Below are positions 25,234-50,921 of a stretch of DNA of 64,000 nt, one piece after another. The stretch covers positions 1 through 64,000 of IMG/VR virus record IMGVR_UViG_3300042923_000569, one strand, 5' to 3'. The stretch's first letter is position 1. Each line of letters opens with the position of its first letter. The translations under genes were made by a program, and so were the position numbers. The notes beneath the pieces are model-generated. The model was not told the origin of the DNA. It did not search any database and saw nothing but the letters and a program-made list of their open reading frames with translations.

Positions 25234-26724
25234 TTACGTCCTACCATTCAAAAAGTTTCGCATACTGGAAACCTTGTCTTGAGCCTTTGGTGTATTTATG
25301 TCTGTCGAATCAGTACTGGTCAAATTTTGAGTAACCGGTTTTTTGGTTACTTGGGTAAGCTTATTTGATAATGCACCCAATGCAGATTGTCCTGGTAGTG
25401 TAGGAGTTGCCATTACGCCACCTTTACCAACACGACCTTTACCACTATGTTTGAATTTGGAGTTAATTTCCATTTCTTGAATAGTTTGTGGATGGTCTAG
25501 TACTCGCAATGAATCAATATCATAAGACATTACAAGTTTAGAACCTACTGCGGAGCTGTTACGTGTTTTCTGGAAGTCAAATACCATTTCACCACGTTCT
25601 TTACGTGCATCGATGTAAATTACGTTATCTGCGGTATAGATTTTGGAAATACCACCTGCGATCTGTGCTTGGCTCTTAACATCTTCACCACTAACACCAG
25701 AACGGTTGAACTGACATGCTGTAAAGACGGTTAAATCCATTTTCATAGCAAGAGCACGTAATTCTTCAGATACAAACTTATCTTTTACAAACGCATTTGA
25801 TTTATCATTGGGTCCACAACGGTCAGAAGTTAATAGATCAAGGTAATCGACACAAACATAATCAAGTTTTACACCAGTTTTAATCTGTAGTTCACGAATA
25901 TAACTTTCAATGTCATTAACAGTACTGACTGATTCTGGTAAACGGTGAATACGTAGCTTACCGTTTGTTTTTTCTTCAATTTTAACTTTTGCAGCAGTTT
26001 CGCTAATATCAACCTTAACACGACCCTGAGCAGTATCAACCATCATACCGTAGATACGTACTGCTACTAGTTCTTTAGCAAGTTCTAGTGAGATATAGGC
26101 ACCATTAAGACCAGCTTTACTGAAGTTTACTGCTAAGTTTTGTAGTACTACTGATTTACCACCACCTGATGCAGCAGCGAAGATTTCTAACTCCTGACGA
26201 CCAAAACCACCGAACAATTTATAGTCCAATGTTTCCCAGCCAGATTTGAAACTGCCTTGCATATCAGCTAGAGAGCTAATTACTTCTTCTGGATTTTCAT
26301 AAATGTCCAAACCTAAATCATTTTGGACTGTTACAAGCATAGCTTCACGAATAAGTTCTTCGATTCCACCGTAACGCTTTTGGTTAACGAGTTCCATTCC
26401 TTGCTGAATTGCTAAAGCAAGTGCTTTATGACGACAAAATTCACCAACACTATCAAGTACTGCTTGTTGATTTAATTCCTGTACTGGCGTTTCAGTATAA
26501 ACACCATCAGCGTTATGTTTAATGTCATTAAGCGTAGGAGCCACGTTGTACTTTGTTGAATAATCATGTACATATTGAATACTTGGTGCGAATTCCTTAT
26601 CAAAGTATTCAGGCTTTAGGACATTCTTGCACCGAACATATAGATCCGGTGTACTAAAAATCTGTGATAGAAGATATAGTTGATATTGAATGTCGTATTT
26701 TCTTACGTCCGTGTTAGTTGCCAT
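25234..26724 (-). CDS. gp41: DnaB-like replicative helicase
   Basis: AASGGGKS, YISLEL, CVDYLDL, TACQFNR, AGGISKIYTAD, KTRNS. Confidence 0.93.
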   Translation of the reverse strand: MATNTDVRKYDIQYQLYLLSQIFSTPDLYVRCKNVLKPEYFDKEFAPSIQYVHDYSTKYNVAPTLNDIKHNADGVYTETPVQELNQQAVLDSVGEFCRHKALALAIQQGMELVNQKRYGGIEELIREAMLVTVQNDLGLDIYENPEEVISSLADMQGSFKSGWETLDYKLFGGFGRQELEIFAAASGGGKSVVLQNLAVNFSKAGLNGAYISLELAKELVAVRIYGMMVDTAQGRVKVDISETAAKVKIEEKTNGKLRIHRLPESVSTVNDIESYIRELQIKTGVKLDYVCVDYLDLLTSDRCGPNDKSNAFVKDKFVSEELRALAMKMDLTVFTACQFNRSGVSGEDVKSQAQIAGGISKIYTADNVIYIDARKERGEMVFDFQKTRNSSAVGSKLVMSYDIDSLRVLDHPQTIQEMEINSKFKHSGKGRVGKGGVMATPTLPGQSALGALSNKLTQVTKKPVTQNLTSTDSTDINTPKAQDKVSSMRNFLNGRT

Positions 26725-26731
26725 TAAAACC

Positions 26732-27778
26732 TCAAATCCATTTGTCTGTTTGTACTCTTATGTCGAATCTGTCAGTGAATATGCTTTTATGTAGAAGTTG
26801 TAAACAAAACAACCTTCCGTACTTTGCACATGCCTCATCAAAATCCTTTATGTGACGAATTCCATTTTCATCACGAACTGTTCCGAAATCAGGCATTGCT
26901 ACACTGAATCCGTTTTCTATAGCTTGTTCTATTGTGACTAAACCATCCTTATCACGATCTGGAACAATAACTATATTTTTTCCACGTTCAGAGGCTTTAT
27001 GCAACAATTCTAATTGTGCAGAACTCATGAAGTAGTTATTAGAAGCCATGCCGCCCATTAATGCTGCGTCAATTGGTCCTTCTCCGACAAGAATAGTTTG
27101 TATTCTGTCATCATTTAGTAAATCGAAGTTATAAAAAATGCTCGTGCTAACTTGATTACGATATCTGTACTGACTATCTTTATCAATATGACGAGCGGTA
27201 TAACCGATAATGTTTCCATTCATATAGTACGGAATTATGAATCTCTGAAACATATAAAATTCTTTAGACGGACTCCAGTACAAATCTAAGTCCAACAGAT
27301 AGGGATTACGCTCATTTACTGCATTTACAACTTTAATAAAATCTGGCGGTATGTTTTCCATATTCACCCATTCTAAAAAAGGCTTTGCATCGCTTGGCAT
27401 CTCTCTCTGTACGATTTTCTGATATAACTTAGACGCAGCAGTATCCTGTACTTCATAGTCTCCACTTTCAACCATCTCTTTTGCAATTAACTTAATTGCA
27501 GCGAGTTGTTTATCGTTTGCACCATAAGAATTAAGAAGCGTTTCCATATCACGACTTAAGTATCTTCCAGGCGACCATCCAGTTTTTAAGTGGCAGTTAA
27601 AACAGTTATAGGTAACGGAACCATCGTTTCTAAACATATGGTTTCCGCGACCCTTGGTATCTGGTCTTGATTGCCCTCTGTACACACAAGCAGGGCAATT
27701 GTGTTGATTCCAGCGGTCCATTATTGGTGCCGGATCATGCATAATTGATGATATAATATCTTGTATCTGATTCATCAT
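26732..27778 (-). CDS. gp61: DNA primase
   Basis: Zn finger CPAC...CFNC; IIPY...GYTAR; TOPRIM EGPIDA, PDRDKDG, KDFD. Confidence 0.9.
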   Translation of the reverse strand: MMNQIQDIISSIMHDPAPIMDRWNQHNCPACVYRGQSRPDTKGRGNHMFRNDGSVTYNCFNCHLKTGWSPGRYLSRDMETLLNSYGANDKQLAAIKLIAKEMVESGDYEVQDTAASKLYQKIVQREMPSDAKPFLEWVNMENIPPDFIKVVNAVNERNPYLLDLDLYWSPSKEFYMFQRFIIPYYMNGNIIGYTARHIDKDSQYRYRNQVSTSIFYNFDLLNDDRIQTILVGEGPIDAALMGGMASNNYFMSSAQLELLHKASERGKNIVIVPDRDKDGLVTIEQAIENGFSVAMPDFGTVRDENGIRHIKDFDEACAKYGRLFCLQLLHKSIFTDRFDIRVQTDKWI

Positions 27779-28866: not shown

Positions 28867-29220
28867 ATGAATGAACACAAAACTTATCCGTTCGTGACGG
28901 TCATAGAGCACGACGAGGTAATCTACTACGGAATCATTAAGATTAAGAGTAAACAATATATGACTTTGTATTGCTTTTCTGAAATGGATGAATCCAATCA
29001 AGAAGAACTGTTACTATTAGCGAATAACTGGTGGTGGCAAAGTAATCGAACAATTCCTATTTGCTTGTTTATGCAAGAAGAAATGGAAAAATTTGAACCT
29101 TATACTAAACGATTTAATACTGACCAAGTTAAAGTACACTCAGGTCCAGTAATATCATTAAGTGATCTACCGACAAAACGAATCAAACGCCGCAATGTTG
29201 CACTCAAGAAGAAGAAATAA
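28867..29220 (+). CDS. Hypothetical conserved protein
   Basis: YPF..., WWWQSNR.IPI, GP..SL, basic tail. Confidence 0.7.
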   Translation: MNEHKTYPFVTVIEHDEVIYYGIIKIKSKQYMTLYCFSEMDESNQEELLLLANNWWWQSNRTIPICLFMQEEMEKFEPYTKRFNTDQVKVHSGPVISLSDLPTKRIKRRNVALKKKK

Positions 29221-29854
29221 TAAATTCTACTAGAGCGTTTAACTGTACAACAATCATCAAACTATATGCATAAGCATGAGGCTTTTTAAAGTACCTTAAC
29301 TTTTTACCTTCTGCGTCAAGCCCAATACTATCATAATCCCAAATCACAGCACGCACTTCATCCCAACTATTCATACTCTGACACTGACGTTTCCCAGGAC
29401 GGATCATTGCAATAAACATTGCAAGTTCATCAATGCTACGTGGACGCCATATATTAAGTAAAGTTATATGCTTCTTAATCTGTGATAATTCTTCTACGAA
29501 TTCTGGCACTAATAATAGATCCCAATCCGGCTCTTTGTTCATTAATTCCTTCAGGTGATCCCTATCACGCACATGTTCGTAAGCCGACTGAGAAAGAATA
29601 TCAACTTTTTGGTATCCTAATCTTTCGGCTTCTTTGTATTGAATACTAGCTAATCCACTAATAGGATCTACTGGTATATTATCAAAATGCACGCCACTAT
29701 TATGCGGGAATAACCCATCTTCCGTAATTCTCTCAACACTTCTAGTACAAGGTAGTTGCTCAATCACAGACTTTCCATCTTTGAAATCAATATCAATATC
29801 TGTTCTTGCTTTACGGTAATTAATAACCTGAGTATTCTTGTGATCCATATCCAT
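29204..29854 (-). CDS. Miniature DnaE/PolIII-alpha catalytic core (216 aa)
   Basis: TDIDIDF, HNSGV, GYQKVDIL, LAMFIAMIRPG, FKKPHAYAY in DnaE order. Confidence 0.85.
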   Translation of the reverse strand: MDMDHKNTQVINYRKARTDIDIDFKDGKSVIEQLPCTRSVERITEDGLFPHNSGVHFDNIPVDPISGLASIQYKEAERLGYQKVDILSQSAYEHVRDRDHLKELMNKEPDWDLLLVPEFVEELSQIKKHITLLNIWRPRSIDELAMFIAMIRPGKRQCQSMNSWDEVRAVIWDYDSIGLDAEGKKLRYFKKPHAYAYSLMIVVQLNALVEFIISSS

Positions 29855-30167
29855 TAGTAATTTCCTTCAATCTCTGAACTTCATTCTTTAATGTCTGAAC
29901 TTCACTAATCAGTACTGAGATAGCGTTATGTTGTTCTTTAATTCTATTCCGCATAGTACTTAACATATCTTCATGCCCTTTAAGGATCATAGCAACACGT
30001 TCTAGTTTAGCAGGGTCCGAAATTTGGAACTTACGATTCCCTAATGTAATCTCTGTTACTGAACCACGCTGAAGAATATCTAACTTAGACTGTGCTTGTT
30101 CTTTTAGTACTTCACTTTTCTTATCAAAACTTTCATCTGGTTTAGATGAATACATTCCTTTGCTCAT
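29820..30167 (-). CDS. Hypothetical coiled-coil protein
   Basis: Heptad-rich C-terminal half. Confidence 0.6.
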   Translation of the reverse strand: MSKGMYSSKPDESFDKKSEVLKEQAQSKLDILQRGSVTEITLGNRKFQISDPAKLERVAMILKGHEDMLSTMRNRIKEQHNAISVLISEVQTLKNEVQRLKEITNGYGSQEYSGY

Positions 30168-30892
30168 AAACCTGCCTCTACAAGTAGTTTTCTTATATCT
30201 ACCACTTCATCGCTGTATCGAATTTGAAGAATCTTGAAATATGTAGGATCGATAAATCTAGCAAGATAATCAAGTTCAGAATCTGAAAATCGATTAAGTA
30301 GTTTATTGCCACTTTCTGGAGATGCAATATATATGAGCCAGGGTGATAGTTTACCTGTCTCGAACCATAGAATTGCACGTTCGGTACTTACATTGTCAAA
30401 GAAACTCGTCCAGTCATTATCTGTAGCAACCCCCCACTCAACTAAAGCATTAATTGAGCGTTCAATTCCACGGCGTGGATGTTCATTGCGAATACATTTA
30501 ATAACCCATTCTTCATATGTTTTATGTGAACGCCATTCGTAAACGGTCATCCCACCAGTTAAAACATGTTCGATGAATTGTTCCTTATTTAGAATATCGT
30601 TCGTCAAAATATATTGAGCGAACTCATAGAAATCATTGAAGTATCGTGATTTGATAAACTGCATCAAAGGTTCTTCATTCTTTTTCATCTGGAATTTATG
30701 GGCTTCCATAAAAAGCATATACAAACGATATGCTTCACGCATTAAACGTGATTCACGATCATTATACCGGTCACGCTTGATACATGCATGAGTCAGTACT
30801 GTGTCTTCTCGTTTATATGACTTTCCACAAAATCTACATTCATAAGTAGGGGCTTTAGCAGCCCCTTTATTACTTTTTGCCATACTTTTCAC
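30164..30892 (-). CDS. Conserved protein with N-terminal Zn finger
   Basis: CRFCGKSY........HAC; GKLSPW. Confidence 0.65.
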   Translation of the reverse strand: MKSMAKSNKGAAKAPTYECRFCGKSYKREDTVLTHACIKRDRYNDRESRLMREAYRLYMLFMEAHKFQMKKNEEPLMQFIKSRYFNDFYEFAQYILTNDILNKEQFIEHVLTGGMTVYEWRSHKTYEEWVIKCIRNEHPRRGIERSINALVEWGVATDNDWTSFFDNVSTERAILWFETGKLSPWLIYIASPESGNKLLNRFSDSELDYLARFIDPTYFKILQIRYSDEVVDIRKLLVEAGL

Positions 30893-34222: not shown

Positions 34223-35068
34223 TTAGTGCGGTTGTTCATCCAATGTAATCGAACCGTCTTCCATTCTGCGTGTAATTTCAGTTTCTACTGTATACGCTAG
34301 ATCAGCATCAAAGTTTGGCATATTAGAATTTAGTACATCCATATTCATAATCATCCACATTAGATAATTCTGAGGTACTTCTTCCATTAACATTCCTTTG
34401 TGCTTACCAATAGTCATTACACTGTATAGGATTGGAGTATTTGCTAGTGCAACTACTTGTGAACCAATTTCCATACTGGTATCAATTAAACCACGTTCAA
34501 TCGCTATATTTACTAAGTGTACAAGTACCTTATATGTCATATATACATCATCTTCAGCACTGTGTGGTACAATTTTACGAGTACATGTTGTATGTAACCC
34601 AAATTTAAACCACAAGAAGCTTAATGTTAGGTTTTTAAACTCAGGGTCTTCAGCAAATAGTTTCTTTGCAAGTTTTAGTGTACAAATCCAACGGCTATCA
34701 TCAACAAACGGTGCAAATTCCGTTGCATCAACACGTTCACTGTTTTTAAGTAGCATTCTACGGTCAAACTGCACATTGTGTCCTACAAAGTACTGTTTTA
34801 GTTCAAAGAATGGATAAAACTCATTATGTCCATCAGCATAAGTTTCATGTCCAACTAAATCTTCTTCAGTAATGAAATGAATAGCAGATGCGTCGGCAGG
34901 AATACCATTTACTGGTTTAAAACGTTCGGTGTAATTTACCATATCCTCAAACGAATCATTTGAACTATTAGGAAATGACGCACTGAATTCAATAATTTCA
35001 GATACATCATCTACACCAGTAGTTTCAGTGTCAAGTACTATAATATTGTTAAAAAAGTCTTCTAGCAT
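34223..35068 (-). CDS. DEDDh 3'-5' exonuclease (ExoX/DnaQ-like) with C-terminal GK(H/Y)KG domain
   Basis: LDTETTG, GHNVQFD, CTLKLA, HSAEDDV, IGKHKG..EEVP..YL.W; start moved to MLEDFF. Confidence 0.88.
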   Translation of the reverse strand: MLEDFFNNIIVLDTETTGVDDVSEIIEFSASFPNSSNDSFEDMVNYTERFKPVNGIPADASAIHFITEEDLVGHETYADGHNEFYPFFELKQYFVGHNVQFDRRMLLKNSERVDATEFAPFVDDSRWICTLKLAKKLFAEDPEFKNLTLSFLWFKFGLHTTCTRKIVPHSAEDDVYMTYKVLVHLVNIAIERGLIDTSMEIGSQVVALANTPILYSVMTIGKHKGMLMEEVPQNYLMWMIMNMDVLNSNMPNFDADLAYTVETEITRRMEDGSITLDEQPH

Positions 35069-35084
35069 TGTATTATTTTGTCCT

Positions 35085-35115
35085 AAAAAACAAAAAGGAC
35101 GCAATAAGCGTCCTT
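35085..35115 (-). terminator. Terminator after uvsY
   Basis: AAGGACGC/GCGTCCTT plus T-rich run. Confidence 0.75.
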
Positions 35116-39412: not shown

Positions 39413-41122
<1,710 letters not shown>

Positions 41123-41179: not shown

Positions 41180-41695
41180 TTACGATGATCTAACAGTTAC
41201 AACTCTGTTATACATAAATGCATGATTTTTAGGTATTTCATAATTATCAACAAAAATATATTCAAAATTCCTTCCACGTAATCCATTTTCTACATCTTGA
41301 ATAAAATAAATCTTAGAATTATTAGAGAAAGTGAATGTATTTGAGGTACGTTGTTCAAGAGTAATAAATCTTTGGTCTTCTGGTAGACGTTCTTGGAATT
41401 TATCAAATAATTCATTAATAATATCAAAATTATATCTAAAGATACTATATGACTTTCCACAAAGTGCCACATTAATATTTTTATTGAATAAAACTGTCCA
41501 TAATGCAGCTATCATAATTGTTGTTGTAGTTCCATCACCACGATTTGTAATAATTTCGTAATGGTCTGAATGATCCATATTAATAATATGGTTCATATCA
41601 TTCATTTGATGTTCTCTAAGACATATTTCTAGATATTCTTCTATAAAATAGAAAATAGTTTGTCTACAAATTTCATATTCTAATGCATAATTCAT
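41180..41695 (-). CDS. Truncated, degenerate terminase-ATPase paralog (pseudo-ATPase)
   Basis: Colinear with TerL N-domain: YFIE, HQ, NRGDGTTT, LW..LFN, FSNNSKI, LRG, IFVDNY. Confidence 0.75.
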   Translation of the reverse strand: MNYALEYEICRQTIFYFIEEYLEICLREHQMNDMNHIINMDHSDHYEIITNRGDGTTTTIMIAALWTVLFNKNINVALCGKSYSIFRYNFDIINELFDKFQERLPEDQRFITLEQRTSNTFTFSNNSKIYFIQDVENGLRGRNFEYIFVDNYEIPKNHAFMYNRVVTVRSS

Positions 41696-47891: not shown

Positions 47892-50800
47892 TTACCAAGC
47901 GAAGAAACCAGTGTTTAATTCGATGGTACTTTTCTCTGTTATACCAATATCCATATCAAGAATACCGAAGATATTACCTAATTTCTTAGTTAGTACTGCC
48001 ATTTCCATAGTATCGTCATCGAATGGTAATTCCATGAACCAATTTGGTAAGTAGTCTGCACAGTCAATTGGGTATCCAACTTTAGTAATCCCTAGTGGAT
48101 TAGGTTTTAGGTCACATACGATAACTTTTGTACCGTCTGTTGCTTCTGGAACTGATTTATCATCGTTTAATTCACGAAGTTTATTCCAGTAGATTGCTGC
48201 TTTAACATGACCAACTGAACATTTTCCTGTTTCCTGGAATTCTTTCTCTTTGTTGGTATAGTTCTTAACAGTTTTTGGTGATCCCTTCTCTACGCTTGGT
48301 TTATCTTTAAACTCACGTTTAAAAGTACGTACTCGGTTACGTAATTCTTCCTCAGATTCACCAACTAGTAATGCGATTAGTGTTTCTTCAAGGAAATTCT
48401 GGATGTATTTTGGTGTGTCTGAACGTTTAATTTCAAGACCCATTGCCTTAATTTCACCAGGTGAACCGTTTTCATCCTTACGGAATCCATCTTCCCAAAA
48501 CTTTAGAATTGCATAACGTTTCTTTTTCAAGAATAAACCACGAGAACCGACCATTTCTAGATCTGCACCAACGATTTTACCGTTTTCAAGACCAGTATTG
48601 AAAGTTGTATCCATAAATTCAGGGAATGATGAACCTACTGTATCACCAATCATCTGATATAGTTCAACTACTTCAGAACGTGATAGGTTAAATTCCATAT
48701 CATTTTCTTTATAGTAGTGTGCAACACTGAAATATACTGAGTCAGTATCGCCATATACTACTACACCACCATTATGATCGTAAGTTTCAGTACATACTTC
48801 ATTAATCTTACTTGCAAGGTGTTTAGTCATACTACGACCAGTTAAAGTAACTGATTGTCCTAGTCGTTTATCGAAGAAACGAGAACCTTTATTCAACAAC
48901 GCACCATATAGTGAGTTTAAAAGAATCTTACGAATCTGTTGGTTCTGCTTCCAGAAATCAGACTGAGTTTTACAGTACTTTTTATCAGAATCAGCCACAA
49001 ATAAACGACCATCTTCAATTCTCATGCCATTTTGTGCAATAATCTTTGCTATTTCAGCAGGATTCTTATCAGCAATTGCTAGACGAAGCAAATAAATTGG
49101 ATCATCTTCATGAAGGTTGGTTTTATGTAGTCCATTTCCAGATTGTAATGACTTTAACTCATTTTCTAAGTCAGCTAGCATATTTTCAGGCATTTCCCAG
49201 CCATCGGTAGCCAAGTGCTTATAGTCAATTACCATTTTCTGTTGTGCTTTACGTTCAGAATACCAAACTGTAAGAATTTCTGGAATTACACCATACTTCG
49301 TCTTATCAAAAAGTGTTCCATTTGCACTTAATACAATAGTACTGTCAGAATTAAAGATAATGTCATATAATTCTTCGCCGGTTGCTTGGAAACTCGTACC
49401 ATCTTCTAAATCTACGGTAATTACTTCCTGTGATTTCTCACGAACCATAGTGAATTCGACGCTTGCAAACAAACCATGCCATGCTTCAGTCCATTTAGGA
49501 TCGAATTTACCACGACCACCATTTTTAGCCCATTTAACACGCTGTTCTTCAATTTTAGATGCCAAATATGCATCAGTGTAATCCTGTCGCAATTGTCCAA
49601 GAATACATTCAGTACTCATGCCTAATGTGCGAAGAACTGTTGGGTATAGTGAGTTAAAGTCCACGCAACCTAACATATCAATCAATCCAAGAATAGGATC
49701 TTGTACCCATGCTCCAGCAGCTTTAGAACCACTTTGTGATTCACCATCTTCATCATCATCTAAGTCAATATCATAATCTTGATACGCAAAATCTTCTTCT
49801 TCTTCAACTTTACGTTTATTGAATACTACTTCACCACGTTGGTGAGCAAGATTTATAATTGCGGTGTCAATTAGTGCTACTGAACCCATAGTTGTTGTGA
49901 TTAACACACATTCTTTATGAGCAAGACGGTTATGTAGGTTGATAAAGTCCATCTTTTCATCGATTTTCTTAAGTAAGATACTATCTTGCTTAGAATAACG
50001 AAGAAAACGCATATAATCTTCACGATATAGCTTATCTAATGAACCATCATATGGTACTTTGTTCTCGCCAGTTACTTTCTCTGCAATATAATCAAGTTTA
50101 TATGACTGTTCAACTTGACCAGCATGTTTTTTGTATAGTGCAAGGTAATCTAAGTGGACGCGTCCAACTAAATCGTAGGTAACGATGGTTTTACCGAACA
50201 TATCTGCTTCACGTGCATTTGGTTTTTTATTCCATAAGCACCAGCGAGCTAATGTAGCTTCATTGAAAACCTTTCTGGTACGGTTAACCATATATGGAAT
50301 ATCAAAGAACTCACTATTCCAACCAGTAAGAATGTCACTATCTTCAATTAGCTCAAAGAAGGTTTCAAACATCTCTGATTCTTCAGTATATAGTACTACT
50401 ATACTGTTTGGATCATTGGTTTCAGCATTTAAACGATTAATAATGTCCTGTGCCTCAATATTATCCATACCAGTAGGTGCCATAGTAAGAACATAGTCTT
50501 TACCTGACCAACTTTGGTATAGTGATATTGCAGTTACACGGTTAAATGGATCACTTGGGGAGGCATAACCAAATTTAGGGTGAAAGTCGGTTTCGATATC
50601 GAAATAAGCGATGTTTAAATCGGGTGAAGGCTTACCCATGTAGTGTTTTGCAAGGGTTTTAAACGTAACATTACAATCCGCTTCATAAATCTTAGCAGAT
50701 GCAGGTAATGATTCCATTTGGCGTTTCATTTCAGAATACCGGGAGAATTCAAACTTCTCGGCCATAGTACCGTTGATAGTTTTATGCTCACCGTTTGGAG

Positions 50801-50921
50801 ATTCTACATAGTATTCATATACTGGCTCAATTTCACGCAGTATACGACGACCATTGACACGTTCTGCTACATGCAAAACTTCTCCGGTGCGTTTTCTATC
50901 CATATATCCATCTATATACAT
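47892..50921 (-). CDS. gp43: Family B DNA polymerase
   Basis: FDIET, WN...FD.PY, DFNSLYP, KILLNSLYG, YGDTDS, KKRY; no intein. Confidence 0.97.
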   Translation of the reverse strand: MYIDGYMDRKRTGEVLHVAERVNGRRILREIEPVYEYYVESPNGEHKTINGTMAEKFEFSRYSEMKRQMESLPASAKIYEADCNVTFKTLAKHYMGKPSPDLNIAYFDIETDFHPKFGYASPSDPFNRVTAISLYQSWSGKDYVLTMAPTGMDNIEAQDIINRLNAETNDPNSIVVLYTEESEMFETFFELIEDSDILTGWNSEFFDIPYMVNRTRKVFNEATLARWCLWNKKPNAREADMFGKTIVTYDLVGRVHLDYLALYKKHAGQVEQSYKLDYIAEKVTGENKVPYDGSLDKLYREDYMRFLRYSKQDSILLKKIDEKMDFINLHNRLAHKECVLITTTMGSVALIDTAIINLAHQRGEVVFNKRKVEEEEDFAYQDYDIDLDDDEDGESQSGSKAAGAWVQDPILGLIDMLGCVDFNSLYPTVLRTLGMSTECILGQLRQDYTDAYLASKIEEQRVKWAKNGGRGKFDPKWTEAWHGLFASVEFTMVREKSQEVITVDLEDGTSFQATGEELYDIIFNSDSTIVLSANGTLFDKTKYGVIPEILTVWYSERKAQQKMVIDYKHLATDGWEMPENMLADLENELKSLQSGNGLHKTNLHEDDPIYLLRLAIADKNPAEIAKIIAQNGMRIEDGRLFVADSDKKYCKTQSDFWKQNQQIRKILLNSLYGALLNKGSRFFDKRLGQSVTLTGRSMTKHLASKINEVCTETYDHNGGVVVYGDTDSVYFSVAHYYKENDMEFNLSRSEVVELYQMIGDTVGSSFPEFMDTTFNTGLENGKIVGADLEMVGSRGLFLKKKRYAILKFWEDGFRKDENGSPGEIKAMGLEIKRSDTPKYIQNFLEETLIALLVGESEEELRNRVRTFKREFKDKPSVEKGSPKTVKNYTNKEKEFQETGKCSVGHVKAAIYWNKLRELNDDKSVPEATDGTKVIVCDLKPNPLGITKVGYPIDCADYLPNWFMELPFDDDTMEMAVLTKKLGNIFGILDMDIGITEKSTIELNTGFFAW

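What the first reader, a model, noticed from the sequence alone, without database searches (positions are those of the whole stretch)
29204..29854. A 216-aa miniature C-family (DnaE) polymerase alongside a full family-B replicase
DnaE motifs are kept in order: R..T-DIDIDF (E. coli D401/D403), HNSGV, KVDIL (D555), LAMFIAMIRPG and FKKPHAYAY. PHP, thumb, clamp-binding, OB and CTD regions are missing (about 1160 aa reduced to 216). All three catalytic Asp remain, so it does not look like a pseudogene. It lies in the gp62 operon near primase and helicase. Inference: a primer-extending or priming enzyme, or a template-independent nucleotidyltransferase (Pol-beta-like fold) for DNA, RNA or protein. 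Comparative jumbo-phage surveys may have noted it; I know of no functional test.
Basis: partly seen in the sequence, partly recalled or inferred. Interest (0 to 1): 0.78.

Follow-up and report, generated by a model that had tools for sequence, protein, structure and literature searches.

The report
C-terminal half of split mini-PolIIIα
The 216-aa gene is real and related to bacterial DNA polymerase III alpha, but it is only the C-terminal half of a two-gene, thumbless mini-polymerase that a 2021 jumbo-phage survey already described and nobody has tested biochemically.

Summary
D19/D21 correspond to E. coli D401/D403, K83/D85 to K553/D555, RPG152-154 to 639-641, and YFKKPH188-193 to the Y754...H760 loop. 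These positions are 96-100% conserved among 100 family representatives. dN/dS is 0.02-0.14. The AlphaFold model (pLDDT 94.9) matches only C-family polymerases (Z 8.5-9.6; next fold Z <=3.6).

It is not a self-contained mini-polymerase. It lacks the first half of the palm, including the Arg-Gly-Ser loop that binds the dNTP. That half is a separate 172-aa gene (genome 353341-353859, outside the window, Pfam PF07733) that ends where this ORF begins in DnaE coordinates. The two genes co-occur in about 95 phage genomes. Rare natural fusions exist; the model of one matches Pol III alpha at Z 22. A complex prediction supports assembly (0.88 against 0.00 for the best control).

The thumb is missing (78 aa, the thumb's length), and so is most of the fingers. 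The steric-gate His and the primer-phosphate Lys are kept, which points to primer-dependent dNTP addition.

Iyer et al. 2021 (PMC7824862) already described this split minimal Pol III alpha in group 2.2 jumbo phages. I found no functional test. Verdict: already known; motifs right, "miniature polymerase" only half right.

The parts
29204..29854 (-). C-terminal unit of the split minimal Pol III alpha (216 aa). It contains the second half of the large palm subdomain, the small palm subdomain and a stub of the fingers. It corresponds to E. coli alpha ~394-784 with the thumb and most of the index finger deleted.
   Evidence: ORF. PHROG 11778 full length, E 1e-107. Profile hits to Pol III alpha chains. 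AF2 model pLDDT 94.9. VIA Z 8.5-9.6 to PolC, T. aquaticus, M. tuberculosis and E. coli alpha over residues 10-215.
29861..29868 (-). Shine-Dalgarno-like GAAGGAAA; its AAGGA core ends 8 nt upstream of the ATG at 29854
   Evidence: Read directly from the sequence. The start overlaps the upstream gene 29820..30167 by 35 nt.
29786..29800 (-). D19-I-D21-I-D23: metal-binding strand (E. coli D401, D403, D405)
   Evidence: HMMER alignments. D19 99/100, D21 99/100, D23 96/100.
29690..29704 (-). H51-N-S-G54-V55: start of the small palm subdomain (E. coli H511-AGG-V515). The thumb would be inserted just before this motif.
   Evidence: Motif and spacing comparison. H51 98/100, G54 98/100.
29600..29608 (-). 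K83-V-D85: primer-phosphate lysine and third catalytic carboxylate (E. coli K553, D555)
   Evidence: Both are 100/100. Roles of K553 and D555 from the preprint read.
29393..29401 (-). R152-P153-G154: finger motif (E. coli R639-P640-G641)
   Evidence: R 98/100, P 100/100.
29276..29293 (-). Y188-F-K-K-P-H193: helix-loop-helix nucleotide pocket (E. coli Y754-G-F756-N-K-S-H760). H193 is the steric-gate histidine.
   Evidence: H 96/100, F/Y at 189 92/100; Y at the preceding column in 65/100, shifted by one residue in this phage. Roles.
28867..29220 (+). Context: conserved convergent 117-aa gene (phrog_11637) overlapping the 3' end of the C-unit by 17 nt
   Evidence: The same arrangement occurs in Kaldavass, PA5oct, Slickus01 and beside a natural fused form.
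26732..27778 (-). Context: DnaG/gp61-type primase, two genes downstream on the same strand
   Evidence: phrog_47 E 1e-36. Linkage conserved to PA5oct and Slickus01.
25234..26724 (-). Context: DnaB-like replicative helicase
   Evidence: phrog_19 E 7e-66; PF03796.
34223..35104 (-). Context: DnaQ/epsilon-like 3'-5' exonuclease (RNase_T family), a possible proofreading partner
   Evidence: phrog_192. PF00929 E 1e-16. Noted as a Pol III epsilon-like protein in phage CBB.
47892..50921 (-). Context: full-length family-B DNA polymerase (gp43-like), the presumed main replicase
   Evidence: phrog_262 E 2e-217. PF00136 + PF03104.

Best explanation
The 216-aa protein is the C-terminal subunit of a two-subunit, minimal C-family (Pol III alpha-type) nucleotidyltransferase.

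Its partner is a 172-aa protein encoded at genome position 353341-353859 (minus strand, outside the window). That is about 33 kb away across the record ends, and 34 kb downstream in colinear relatives. The partner supplies the first half of the palm (E. coli 271-392), including the Arg-Gly-Ser loop that holds the sugar and the beta/gamma phosphates of the incoming nucleotide.

The 216-aa protein supplies:
- the strand with the two metal-binding Asp (D19, D21);
- the small palm subdomain with K83, which contacts the primer's terminal phosphate, and D85, the third carboxylate;
- a stub of the fingers with the RPG motif and the Y/F...H loop that forms the nascent base-pair pocket and gates out ribonucleotides.

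The cut lies inside the Pol-beta-type fold, so neither protein can form an active site alone; they must assemble as a heterodimer.

[quoted passage not shown] On its own the enzyme should therefore be distributive, and it probably depends on other replisome proteins for DNA grip.

Shown here: homology, the split, co-occurrence, purifying selection, conservation of the active-site residues, and the predicted fold.
Supported by prediction only: assembly of the two halves.
Inferred: that it adds dNTPs to a primer terminus on a template.
More speculative: that it works beside the family-B replicase in replication, for example extending primers made by the neighbouring primase, or in repair.
For: Homology:
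- C-unit profile against the PDB: the nine best hits are all Pol III alpha, with three colinear segments. hhalign to E. coli DnaE gives E 8e-5.
- The N-unit passes the Pfam PF07733 cut-off (36.9 against 23.9 bits) and aligns to E. coli 317-395 at 94% probability.

Fold:
- The C-unit model has pLDDT 94.9. VIA Z is 9.6/9.4/9.0/8.5 to PolC, T. aquaticus, M. tuberculosis and E. coli alpha; the next fold scores <=3.6.
- The natural fused homolog P0093 scores Z 22.3 over T. aquaticus 292-830 and E. coli 271-773; generic Pol-beta-type transferases follow at Z about 3.

The split:
- The N-unit ends at E. coli L392 and the C-unit DxD is D401/D403. Every split N-unit ends at the same EFLK motif.
- The N-unit is the only PF07733 match in the phage genome.

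Working together:
- 96 against 93 phage records, with near-identical genus tallies.
- 5 of 5 divergent edge genomes carry both halves.
- Natural single-gene fusions exist. One sits at the C-unit's syntenic slot.
- Complex prediction: ipSAE 0.88 against a best control of 0.00. That mark was reached by 58 of 80 solved complexes and 2 of 110 mismatched pairs. The interface includes the GRGS loop and the DxD and KxD strands.

Selection:
- dN/dS 0.02-0.14.
- D19 99, D21 99, K83 100, D85 100, H51 98, R152 98, P153 100, H193 96 of 100. N-unit R140, G141, S142 are 32 of 32.

Residue roles come from the E. coli ternary-complex preprint: GS motif, D401/D403, Y754/F756/H760 and R639-P-G641 at or near the dNTP; K553 on the primer phosphate; H760 as steric gate.

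Thumb loss: the D403-to-H511 spacing is 108 aa in E. coli and 30 aa here. The difference of 78 equals residues 433-510.

Replication context:
- The C-unit lies beside primase + DnaB, from Rak2-like phages to PA5oct and Slickus01.
- The N-unit lies between topoisomerase II and the clamp loader.
- A divergent fused form overlaps the end of a PF03090 replicase gene.

Prior description: Iyer et al. 2021.
Against: - There is no biochemical, genetic or expression evidence for any member. The public 'RNA' runs that hold the locus are probably DNA.
- Foldseek E-values for the C-unit alone are modest (9e-3 and weaker, TMq 0.35-0.48), and Pfam's own finger model is below threshold (11.4 against 22 bits).
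- Some dNTP contacts of E. coli alpha are not kept. R390 aligns to an invariant acidic residue (E168 of the N-unit). The index-finger segment carrying R709/K714/K715 is deleted. The pocket therefore differs from the cellular enzyme.
- Without a thumb or a duplex-binding domain it is unclear how the enzyme holds primer-template DNA.
- The complex score is the model's own confidence, and it may partly reflect memory of intact Pol III alpha structures.
Confidence: 0.8

Rival explanations
1. One reading: the 216-aa protein is a self-sufficient miniature polymerase or transferase that needs no second catalytic chain.
For: All three catalytic Asp, K83 and the finger motifs lie on this one chain. The model folds confidently on its own.
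Against: - It lacks the GS loop (E. coli R362-G363-S364) and the whole first half of the palm. R362A abolishes activity in E. coli alpha.
- A partner carrying exactly that piece co-occurs in essentially every genome.
- The partner is fused to it in rare natural genes.
- The partner is predicted to bind it through the active-site elements.
Confidence: 0.03
2. The heterodimer is an active nucleotidyltransferase, but not a templated replicative or repair DNA polymerase. It might be a template-independent 3'-tailing enzyme, a maker of a nucleotide signal, or an enzyme used in phage-host conflict.
For: - The enzyme has lost the thumb, most of the fingers and all duplex-binding domains.
- R390 and the R709/K714/K715 contacts are not kept.
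- Pol-beta-fold enzymes include many non-templated transferases, which appear as the weak Z~3 matches.
- Both subunits are acidic, with pI 5.7 and 4.7.
Against: - The residues kept are those specific to templated dNTP insertion in C-family polymerases: the primer-phosphate Lys (100%), the steric-gate His (96%), the base-stacking aromatic loop and RPG.
- The structural match is to Pol III alpha/PolC at Z 22, against Z ~3 for other Pol-beta-type transferases.
- Both genes sit in replication gene clusters. A fused relative is coupled to a replicase gene.
Confidence: 0.14
3. It is a decaying remnant of a captured bacterial dnaE (as the CBB paper's word 'truncated' suggests for the partner), or a non-catalytic structural protein. 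GenBank's 'putative membrane protein' label for the CBB and GAP32 orthologs would fit the second idea.
For: The CBB paper called the 172-aa partner a truncated Pol III alpha. CBB_287, the ortholog of this ORF, is annotated as a membrane protein. Residues 196-214 are hydrophobic.
Against: - dN/dS is 0.02-0.14.
- There are 266 family representatives at E <= 0.001, nearly all full length at 185-215 aa.
- Catalytic residues are 96-100% conserved.
- The hydrophobic stretch is modelled as a helix directly after the KSH-type motif, and residues up to 215 superpose on Pol III alpha/PolC.
- It is not in the CBB virion proteome list, although its neighbour CBB_286 is.
Confidence: 0.02
4. The two halves are joined after translation by a split intein, as in cyanobacterial DnaE.
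For: Cyanobacterial dnaE is a precedent for a C-family polymerase encoded in two distant genes (my own knowledge). Some viral Pol III alpha clusters carry Hint modules.
Against: - The N-unit stops right after EFLK(W), with no intein N-fragment.
- The C-unit has at most ~17 residues before the DxD strand, and many homologs start 1-3 residues before it. That leaves no room for an intein C-fragment.
- No Hint/intein Pfam hit appears on either protein.
Confidence: 0.01

Closest known systems
Split minimal DNA polymerase III alpha of group 2.2 jumbo phages (Iyer, Anantharaman, Krishnan, Burroughs, Aravind 2021, Viruses 13:63; PMC7824862)
   Same: This is that system. There is an N-terminal NTP-binding unit and a C-terminal Mg2+/template-binding unit on distantly located genes, no other Pol III domains, and a family-B polymerase alongside. 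The window's phage is a Rak2/CBB/GAP32-type phage (97% aa identity to CBB_287).
   Different: Nothing differs in kind.
- the exact cut point (after E. coli L392);
- deletion of a segment the size of the thumb (78 aa);
- conservation of the steric-gate His and the primer-phosphate Lys;
- rare natural fused forms and their contexts;
- presence in a 142-kb non-jumbo phage (Slickus01);
- structure and complex predictions.
Bacterial Pol III alpha (DnaE) and PolC, the C-family replicative polymerases
   Same: It has the same Pol-beta-type palm, with D401/D403/D555, the GS motif, K553, RPG and the Y..F...H steric-gate loop. The fused form's model superposes on T. aquaticus, M. tuberculosis and E. coli alpha and on PolC at Z 14-22.
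   Different: - It is encoded as two polypeptides cut inside the palm.
- PHP, thumb, most of the index finger, the middle-to-little fingers, and the beta-clamp-binding, HhH, OB and tau-binding domains are missing.
- R390 and R709/K714/K715 are not conserved.
- About 388 aa in total against 1160.
Cyanobacterial split DnaE (dnaE-n / dnaE-c joined by a split intein)
   Same: A C-family polymerase encoded by two widely separated genes.
   Different: No intein fragments are present here. The cut is inside the palm, whereas as I recall the cyanobacterial cut lies further along the protein. The two chains must associate non-covalently.
DnaE of Bacillus subtilis, working beside PolC (a two-polymerase replisome in which DnaE extends RNA primers; my own knowledge)
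   Same: A C-family enzyme that coexists with a different main replicase. Here the gene lies beside the primase-helicase genes, and in one relative beside a replicase/primase gene.
   Different: This is a functional analogy only and is untested. The main replicase here is family B, and the mini-enzyme lacks clamp-binding and DNA-binding domains.

Membership tests
C-family DNA polymerase catalytic core (Pol III alpha / PolC) | Three catalytic carboxylates on the Pol-beta-type palm (E. coli D401, D403, D555) | tested here: met
   D19, D21 and D85 align to them and are conserved 99/99/100 of 100.
C-family DNA polymerase catalytic core (Pol III alpha / PolC) | GS motif (R362-G363-S364) that binds the incoming nucleotide, on the same chain | tested here: not met
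   It is absent from the 216-aa ORF. It is present as R140-G141-S142 (32/32) on the separate 172-aa N-unit.
C-family DNA polymerase catalytic core (Pol III alpha / PolC) | Primer-phosphate lysine (K553), the RPG motif and the helix-loop-helix pocket with the steric-gate His (Y754/F756/H760) | tested here: met
   K83 100/100, R152 98, P153 100, F189 (F/Y) 92, H193 96. The Tyr is shifted by one residue in this phage. Roles.
C-family DNA polymerase catalytic core (Pol III alpha / PolC) | Palm + fingers fold superposable on solved Pol III alpha/PolC | tested here: met
   C-unit Z 8.5-9.6 with 176-202 residues aligned, next fold <=3.6. Fused homolog Z 14-22 with ~290 residues aligned.
C-family DNA polymerase catalytic core (Pol III alpha / PolC) | Thumb domain (E. 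coli 433-510) | tested here: not met
   The D403-to-H511 spacing is 108 aa in E. coli and 30 aa here. Domain limits.
C-family DNA polymerase catalytic core (Pol III alpha / PolC) | PHP domain, beta-clamp-binding/HhH, OB and tau-binding domains | tested here: not met
   The structural alignments span only E. coli 271-784. Neither chain has a Pfam PHP/HHH_6 hit. The phage genome has only one PF07733 match.
C-family DNA polymerase catalytic core (Pol III alpha / PolC) | Pfam membership at the curated threshold (PF07733 / PF17657) | tested here: not met
   The C-unit gets only PF17657 at 11.4 bits against a cut-off of 22. The N-unit passes PF07733 at 36.9 against 23.9.
C-family DNA polymerase catalytic core (Pol III alpha / PolC) | Template-directed DNA polymerase activity | not testable with these tools
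   No assay has been reported. It needs biochemistry.
Split minimal Pol III alpha of group 2.2 jumbo phages (Iyer et al. 2021) | C-terminal unit with the Mg2+-binding and template-binding subdomains as a stand-alone protein | tested here: met
Split minimal Pol III alpha of group 2.2 jumbo phages (Iyer et al. 2021) | Separate N-terminal NTP-binding unit encoded at a distant locus of the same genome | tested here: met
   Genome 353341-353859 (-), found. The two genes are 31-44 kb apart in relatives and 11-182 kb apart in edge genomes.
Split minimal Pol III alpha of group 2.2 jumbo phages (Iyer et al. 2021) | Accompanied by a family-B DNA polymerase and T4-like replisome genes | tested here: met
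   PolB at 47892..50921, plus primase, DnaB, SSB, UvsX and a clamp loader.
PHROG 11778 ('DNA polymerase') | Full-length profile match | tested here: met
   E 1.1e-107, residues 12-214 against profile positions 1-197 of 197.

The most novel reading that the evidence does not exclude
The heterodimeric, thumbless mini-Pol III alpha is a dedicated primer-extension polymerase. It takes over from the neighbouring primase-helicase and hands off to the family-B replicase. That would give Rak2-like phages a two-polymerase replisome analogous to DnaE/PolC in Firmicutes or Pol alpha/delta in eukaryotes. It would also define the smallest working C-family polymerase: palm plus a finger stub, about 388 aa in two chains.
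Probability: 0.3. Interest if true: 0.7.

Novelty: already known. Interest (0 to 1): 0.4.

Why it matters
If the pair is active, it is the smallest known C-family polymerase. It would be a natural experiment showing which parts of Pol III alpha are needed for chemistry (palm plus the helix-loop-helix pocket) and which for processivity and fidelity (thumb, fingers, PHP, clamp binding). A polymerase whose catalytic fold is assembled from two separately encoded chains would be unusual among replication enzymes, and it bears on ideas about how the bacterial replicase arose (Iyer et al. 2021). It would also mean that Rak2-like jumbo phages, some of which are studied for phage therapy, carry a second DNA polymerase beside the T4-type one. 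For this scan, the practical points are that the gene is already described in the literature, and that the GenBank labels 'hypothetical' and 'putative membrane protein' for its orthologs should be replaced.

Tried and rejected
- **Single-sequence searches** of the 216-aa protein found nothing useful: one sub-threshold Pfam hit, no NCBIfam hit, and only chance-level PDB matches. Profiles and structure were needed.
- **Expression evidence.** The only 'RNA' runs holding the locus are wastewater libraries that the tool flags as probably DNA, and the contigs are short and partly from relatives. No conclusion is possible. The PA5oct omics paper does not mention the gene under the terms I searched.
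- **Promoter and terminator scan** around the gene did not differ from shuffled sequence.
- **Composite alignments.** A3 put the N-units in the wrong place, and A4 pulled the C-unit DIDID onto the N-unit DLDI. Both were discarded. A5 was checked at four anchor motifs before use.
- **Cellular relatives.** A scan of genome contigs with the fused form P0093 found none. The Atlas lead to about 360-aa Bacillota proteins therefore stays unconfirmed.
- **Split-intein trans-splicing** was rejected: there are no intein fragments.
- **The 'gp62 operon' context** was rejected for this ORF. It applies to the partner gene.
- **The epsilon-like exonuclease** as a strictly co-varying partner was not supported as exclusive: its relatives occur in 145 phage records, including small unrelated phages.
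- **Supplementary tables** of Iyer et al. are not held, so I could not match accession numbers.
Full report
**1. The observation**

An ORF of 216 codons runs from 29854 down to 29204 on the minus strand. An AAGGA ribosome-binding site lies 8 nt upstream of the ATG (read). The start overlaps the upstream gene (29820..30167) by 35 nt. The 3' end overlaps a conserved convergent gene (28867..29220, phrog_11637) by 17 nt.

The window comes from a Rak2/CBB/GAP32-type jumbo phage. The protein is 97% identical to CBB_287 of Pectobacterium phage CBB, and relatives occur in 96 phage records. A full-length family-B polymerase lies at 47892..50921 (phrog_262, PF00136 + PF03104). Primase (26732..27778) and a DnaB-like helicase (25234..26724) lie just downstream on the same strand.

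**2. Is it really DnaE-like?**

The single sequence gives only a sub-threshold Pfam hit (DNA_pol3_finger, 11.4 bits against a cut-off of 22) and chance-level matches in the PDB. PHROG 11778 ('DNA polymerase') matches it end to end (E 1e-107).

An exhaustive search found 266 family representatives at E <= 0.001, nearly all 185-215 aa long. A profile of 100 of them (A1) finds Pol III alpha as its nine best PDB sequences (E 6e-6 to 1e-4), in three colinear blocks. hhalign to E. coli DnaE gives E 8e-5.

The residue map is as follows:
- D19/D21/D23 = E. coli D401/D403/D405
- H51xxG54V = H511AGGV
- K83/D85 = K553/D555
- R152-P-G = R639-P-G641
- Y188-FKKP-H193 = Y754-GFNKS-H760

The AlphaFold model is confident (pLDDT 94.9, pTM 0.85). 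The top Foldseek hits are all C-family polymerases, with probabilities 0.97-1.00 but modest E-values. In the VIA-align second look the 13 best entries are all Pol III alpha or PolC (Z 5.8-9.6, 176-202 residues aligned, covering E. coli 394/399-784). The best unrelated fold scores 3.6. An ESM Atlas model of a close family member independently superposes on Pol III alpha clusters (TM 0.72-0.76).

**3.

Two longer hits in the family search (P0092, 336 aa; P0093, 375 aa) carry an extra N-terminal region with a GRGSS motif. Using that region as a query found a 172-aa ORF in the window's own genome at 353341-353859, minus strand, outside the window.

This N-unit passes Pfam's PF07733 threshold (36.9 against 23.9 bits). 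It is the only PF07733 match in the phage genome. It aligns to E. coli alpha 317-395 at 94% probability. Its R140-G141-S142 correspond to E. coli R362-G363-S364, and it ends at E. coli L392. The 216-aa protein takes over a few residues later, with D401/D403. All split N-units end at the same EFLK motif.

The cut therefore lies inside the Pol-beta-type nucleotidyltransferase fold, between the GS-motif helix and the metal-binding strand. According to a 2026 preprint on E. coli Pol III ternary complexes, the GS motif contacts the sugar and the beta/gamma phosphates of the incoming dNTP, and R362A abolishes activity. The 216-aa protein alone should not be active.

**4. Evidence that the halves work together**

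- **Co-occurrence.** 96 phage records hold the C-unit and 93 hold the N-unit, with near-identical genus tallies. Five of five divergent genomes checked individually carry both halves, always as separate genes on the same strand, 11-182 kb apart: Slickus01, XacN1, Vibrio 2.275.O, Atu_ph07 and SCTP-2.
- **Natural fusions.** Rare single-gene fusions exist (P0093, P0151, P0152, P0092). The P0152 fusion sits at the C-unit's syntenic position, next to the same two neighbour families as in the window.
- **Fold of the fused form.** Modelled with an alignment I checked at four anchor motifs (A5), P0093 gives pLDDT 86.9. It superposes on the T. aquaticus ternary complex at Z 22.3, M. tuberculosis DnaE1 at 22.1, PolC at 21.0 and E. 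coli alpha at 14-16. About 290 residues align, spanning E. coli 271-773, that is from the start of the palm to the first part of the fingers. Generic Pol-beta-type transferases follow at Z about 3.
- **Complex prediction.** The window's N-unit and C-unit score ipSAE 0.88 against a best control of 0.00. That mark was reached by 58 of 80 solved complexes and 2 of 110 mismatched pairs. The interface includes the GRGS loop and the DxD and KxD strands. This supports binding but does not show it, and it may partly reflect the model's memory of intact Pol III alpha.

**5. What is kept and what is lost**

Kept:
- D19 99/100, D21 99/100, D85 100/100, K83 100/100
- H51 98/100, R152 98/100, P153 100/100, H193 96/100
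- an aromatic residue at the F756 position in 92/100
- Tyr at the Y754 position in 65/100; in this phage the Tyr is shifted by one residue
- N-unit R140/G141/S142 in 32/32

By the roles given, these are the metal ligands, the lysine on the primer's last phosphate (K553A is dead in E. coli), the RPG motif, the base-stacking loop, and the histidine that clashes with a 2'-OH.

Lost:
- **Thumb.** The D403-to-H511 spacing is 108 aa in E. coli and 30 aa here. The difference of 78 equals the length of residues 433-510.
- **Index finger.** About 80 aa are missing between RPG and the HLH loop, including the segment with R709/K714/K715.
- **Everything after about E. coli 784**, and the PHP domain.
- **R390.** It aligns to an invariant acidic residue in the N-unit.

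Pairwise dN/dS among six orthologs is 0.02-0.14 where dS could be estimated, so the gene is under strong purifying selection.

**6. Most likely mechanism**

The two proteins assemble into one palm with a finger stub and add dNTPs to a primer 3' end. This is inferred from the conserved primer-phosphate lysine and steric-gate histidine. The enzyme is probably distributive unless other proteins hold the DNA.

The genomic context points to replication:
- The C-unit is linked to primase + DnaB from Rak2-like phages (about 97% identity) out to PA5oct (40%) and the 142-kb phage Slickus01 (33%).
- The N-unit lies between topoisomerase II and a gp44-type clamp loader.
- A divergent fused form overlaps the stop codon of a PF03090 'Replicase' gene in a metagenomic contig. 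As far as I recall, PF03090 is an archaeo-eukaryotic-primase-type plasmid initiator.

Iyer et al. proposed cooperation with the family-B enzyme on one strand, or repair. A primer-extension role, like B. subtilis DnaE beside PolC (my own knowledge), is an attractive guess but unproven.

**7. Rivals**

- **Stand-alone mini-polymerase:** rejected; see sections 3 and 4.
- **Non-templated or non-replicative transferase:** cannot be excluded, given the lost DNA-binding parts, but the residues retained are those specific to templated dNTP insertion.
- **Relic or membrane protein:** rejected. Selection is strong, and the only hydrophobic stretch (residues 196-214) is modelled as a helix directly after the KSH-type motif, with residues up to 215 superposing on Pol III alpha/PolC. 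CBB_287 is not in the CBB virion proteome list, although its neighbour CBB_286 is.
- **Split-intein trans-splicing, as in cyanobacterial DnaE:** rejected. There is no room for intein fragments.

**8. Novelty**

[quoted passage not shown] Earlier genome papers had noticed only the N-unit, as a 'truncated' Pol III alpha, together with an epsilon-like DnaQ (CBB; Atu_ph07). PHROGs already labels the C-unit family 'DNA polymerase'.

I found no experimental follow-up. The finding is therefore already known as a computational prediction, and its function is open.

- the exact cut point;
- deletion of a segment the size of the thumb;
- the residue-by-residue check against the new ternary-complex data;
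- the fused forms and their contexts;
- presence of the split pair in a non-jumbo phage;
- the fold and complex predictions.

**9. Limits**

- There is no expression or activity evidence. The public 'RNA' runs holding the locus are probably DNA.
- I could not match accession numbers with the 2021 paper, because its supplements are not held. The identity with their 'C-terminal unit' rests on the description and on the phage group.
- The Atlas lead to Bacillota mini-forms is not confirmed by alignment.

Noticed in passing
window 34223-35104 (-): A stand-alone DnaQ/epsilon-like 3'-5' exonuclease (PF00929, 293 aa) lies seven genes upstream of the C-unit, although the family-B polymerase has its own exonuclease domain. 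It could be the proofreader of the mini-Pol III. However, the PHP domain that as I recall binds epsilon in bacteria is absent, and relatives also occur in small unrelated phages (145 records).
   Followed up: partly
L015:1516-4181 (metagenomic contig): A divergent fused mini-Pol III alpha (P0092, 336 aa, lacking the variable N-terminal ~90 aa) overlaps the stop codon of a 552-aa PF03090 'Replicase' + HTH protein. This looks like a two-gene initiator/primase + mini-polymerase replication module of a small element, not a jumbo phage.
   Followed up: partly
ESM Atlas clusters (no locus); query P0093: The nearest clusters by features are Bacillota 'hypothetical proteins' of 355-378 aa with PF07733 + PF17657. 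Structurally similar proteins of 454-500 aa are fused to an XRE-type HTH. This suggests unsplit minimal Pol III alpha modules in Firmicutes (prophage or other). It is not confirmed by alignment, and a genome-contig scan with P0093 found nothing.
   Followed up: partly
L017 (Alishewanella phage vB_AspM_Slickus01, 141,644 bp) and L024: The split pair also occurs in a 142-kb phage, below the usual 200-kb jumbo threshold. The clamp loader, C-unit and primase/helicase all lie within 5.5 kb, and the N-unit is 11 kb away. The system is therefore not strictly a jumbo-phage trait.
   Followed up: partly
window 28867-29220 (+): A 117-aa convergent gene (phrog_11637, unknown function) overlaps the 3' end of the C-unit by 17 nt. 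The tail-to-tail arrangement is conserved in Kaldavass and beside a fused form (L014). A small convergent gene also sits at this position in PA5oct and Slickus01, though its family was not checked there.
   Followed up: partly
window 30164-30892 (-): A 242-aa protein of unknown function (phrog_11058) has a weak C2H2 zinc-finger-like N-terminus. It lies two genes upstream of the C-unit in this phage group. In PA5oct-type phage PAC2 a 'C2H2-type domain-containing protein' is annotated beside the C-unit match.
   Followed up: no
window 39413-41116 (-) and 41180-41695 (-): The large terminase appears to be in two adjacent ORFs (567 aa and 171 aa, both matching terminase large-subunit PHROGs), separated by a 63-nt gap. 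This could be a split gene, an intron or intein remnant, or a duplication.
   Followed up: no
L016:3146-4743 (genome 350645-352242, -): A gp44-type clamp loader (phrog_168, 319 aa) is followed by an overlapping 218-aa ORF (phrog_420, unknown). The second ORF may be the gp62-like small subunit that the CBB paper reported as missing.
   Followed up: no
N-unit residues 1-95 (L001:1738-2022, -): The first ~95 residues of the N-unit have no counterpart in DnaE by sequence and are poorly modelled in the fused form (pLDDT 43-67). In the complex prediction, however, residues 1-30 and 66-77 touch the C-unit. They may replace a lost domain such as the thumb or the PHP contacts.
   Followed up: no
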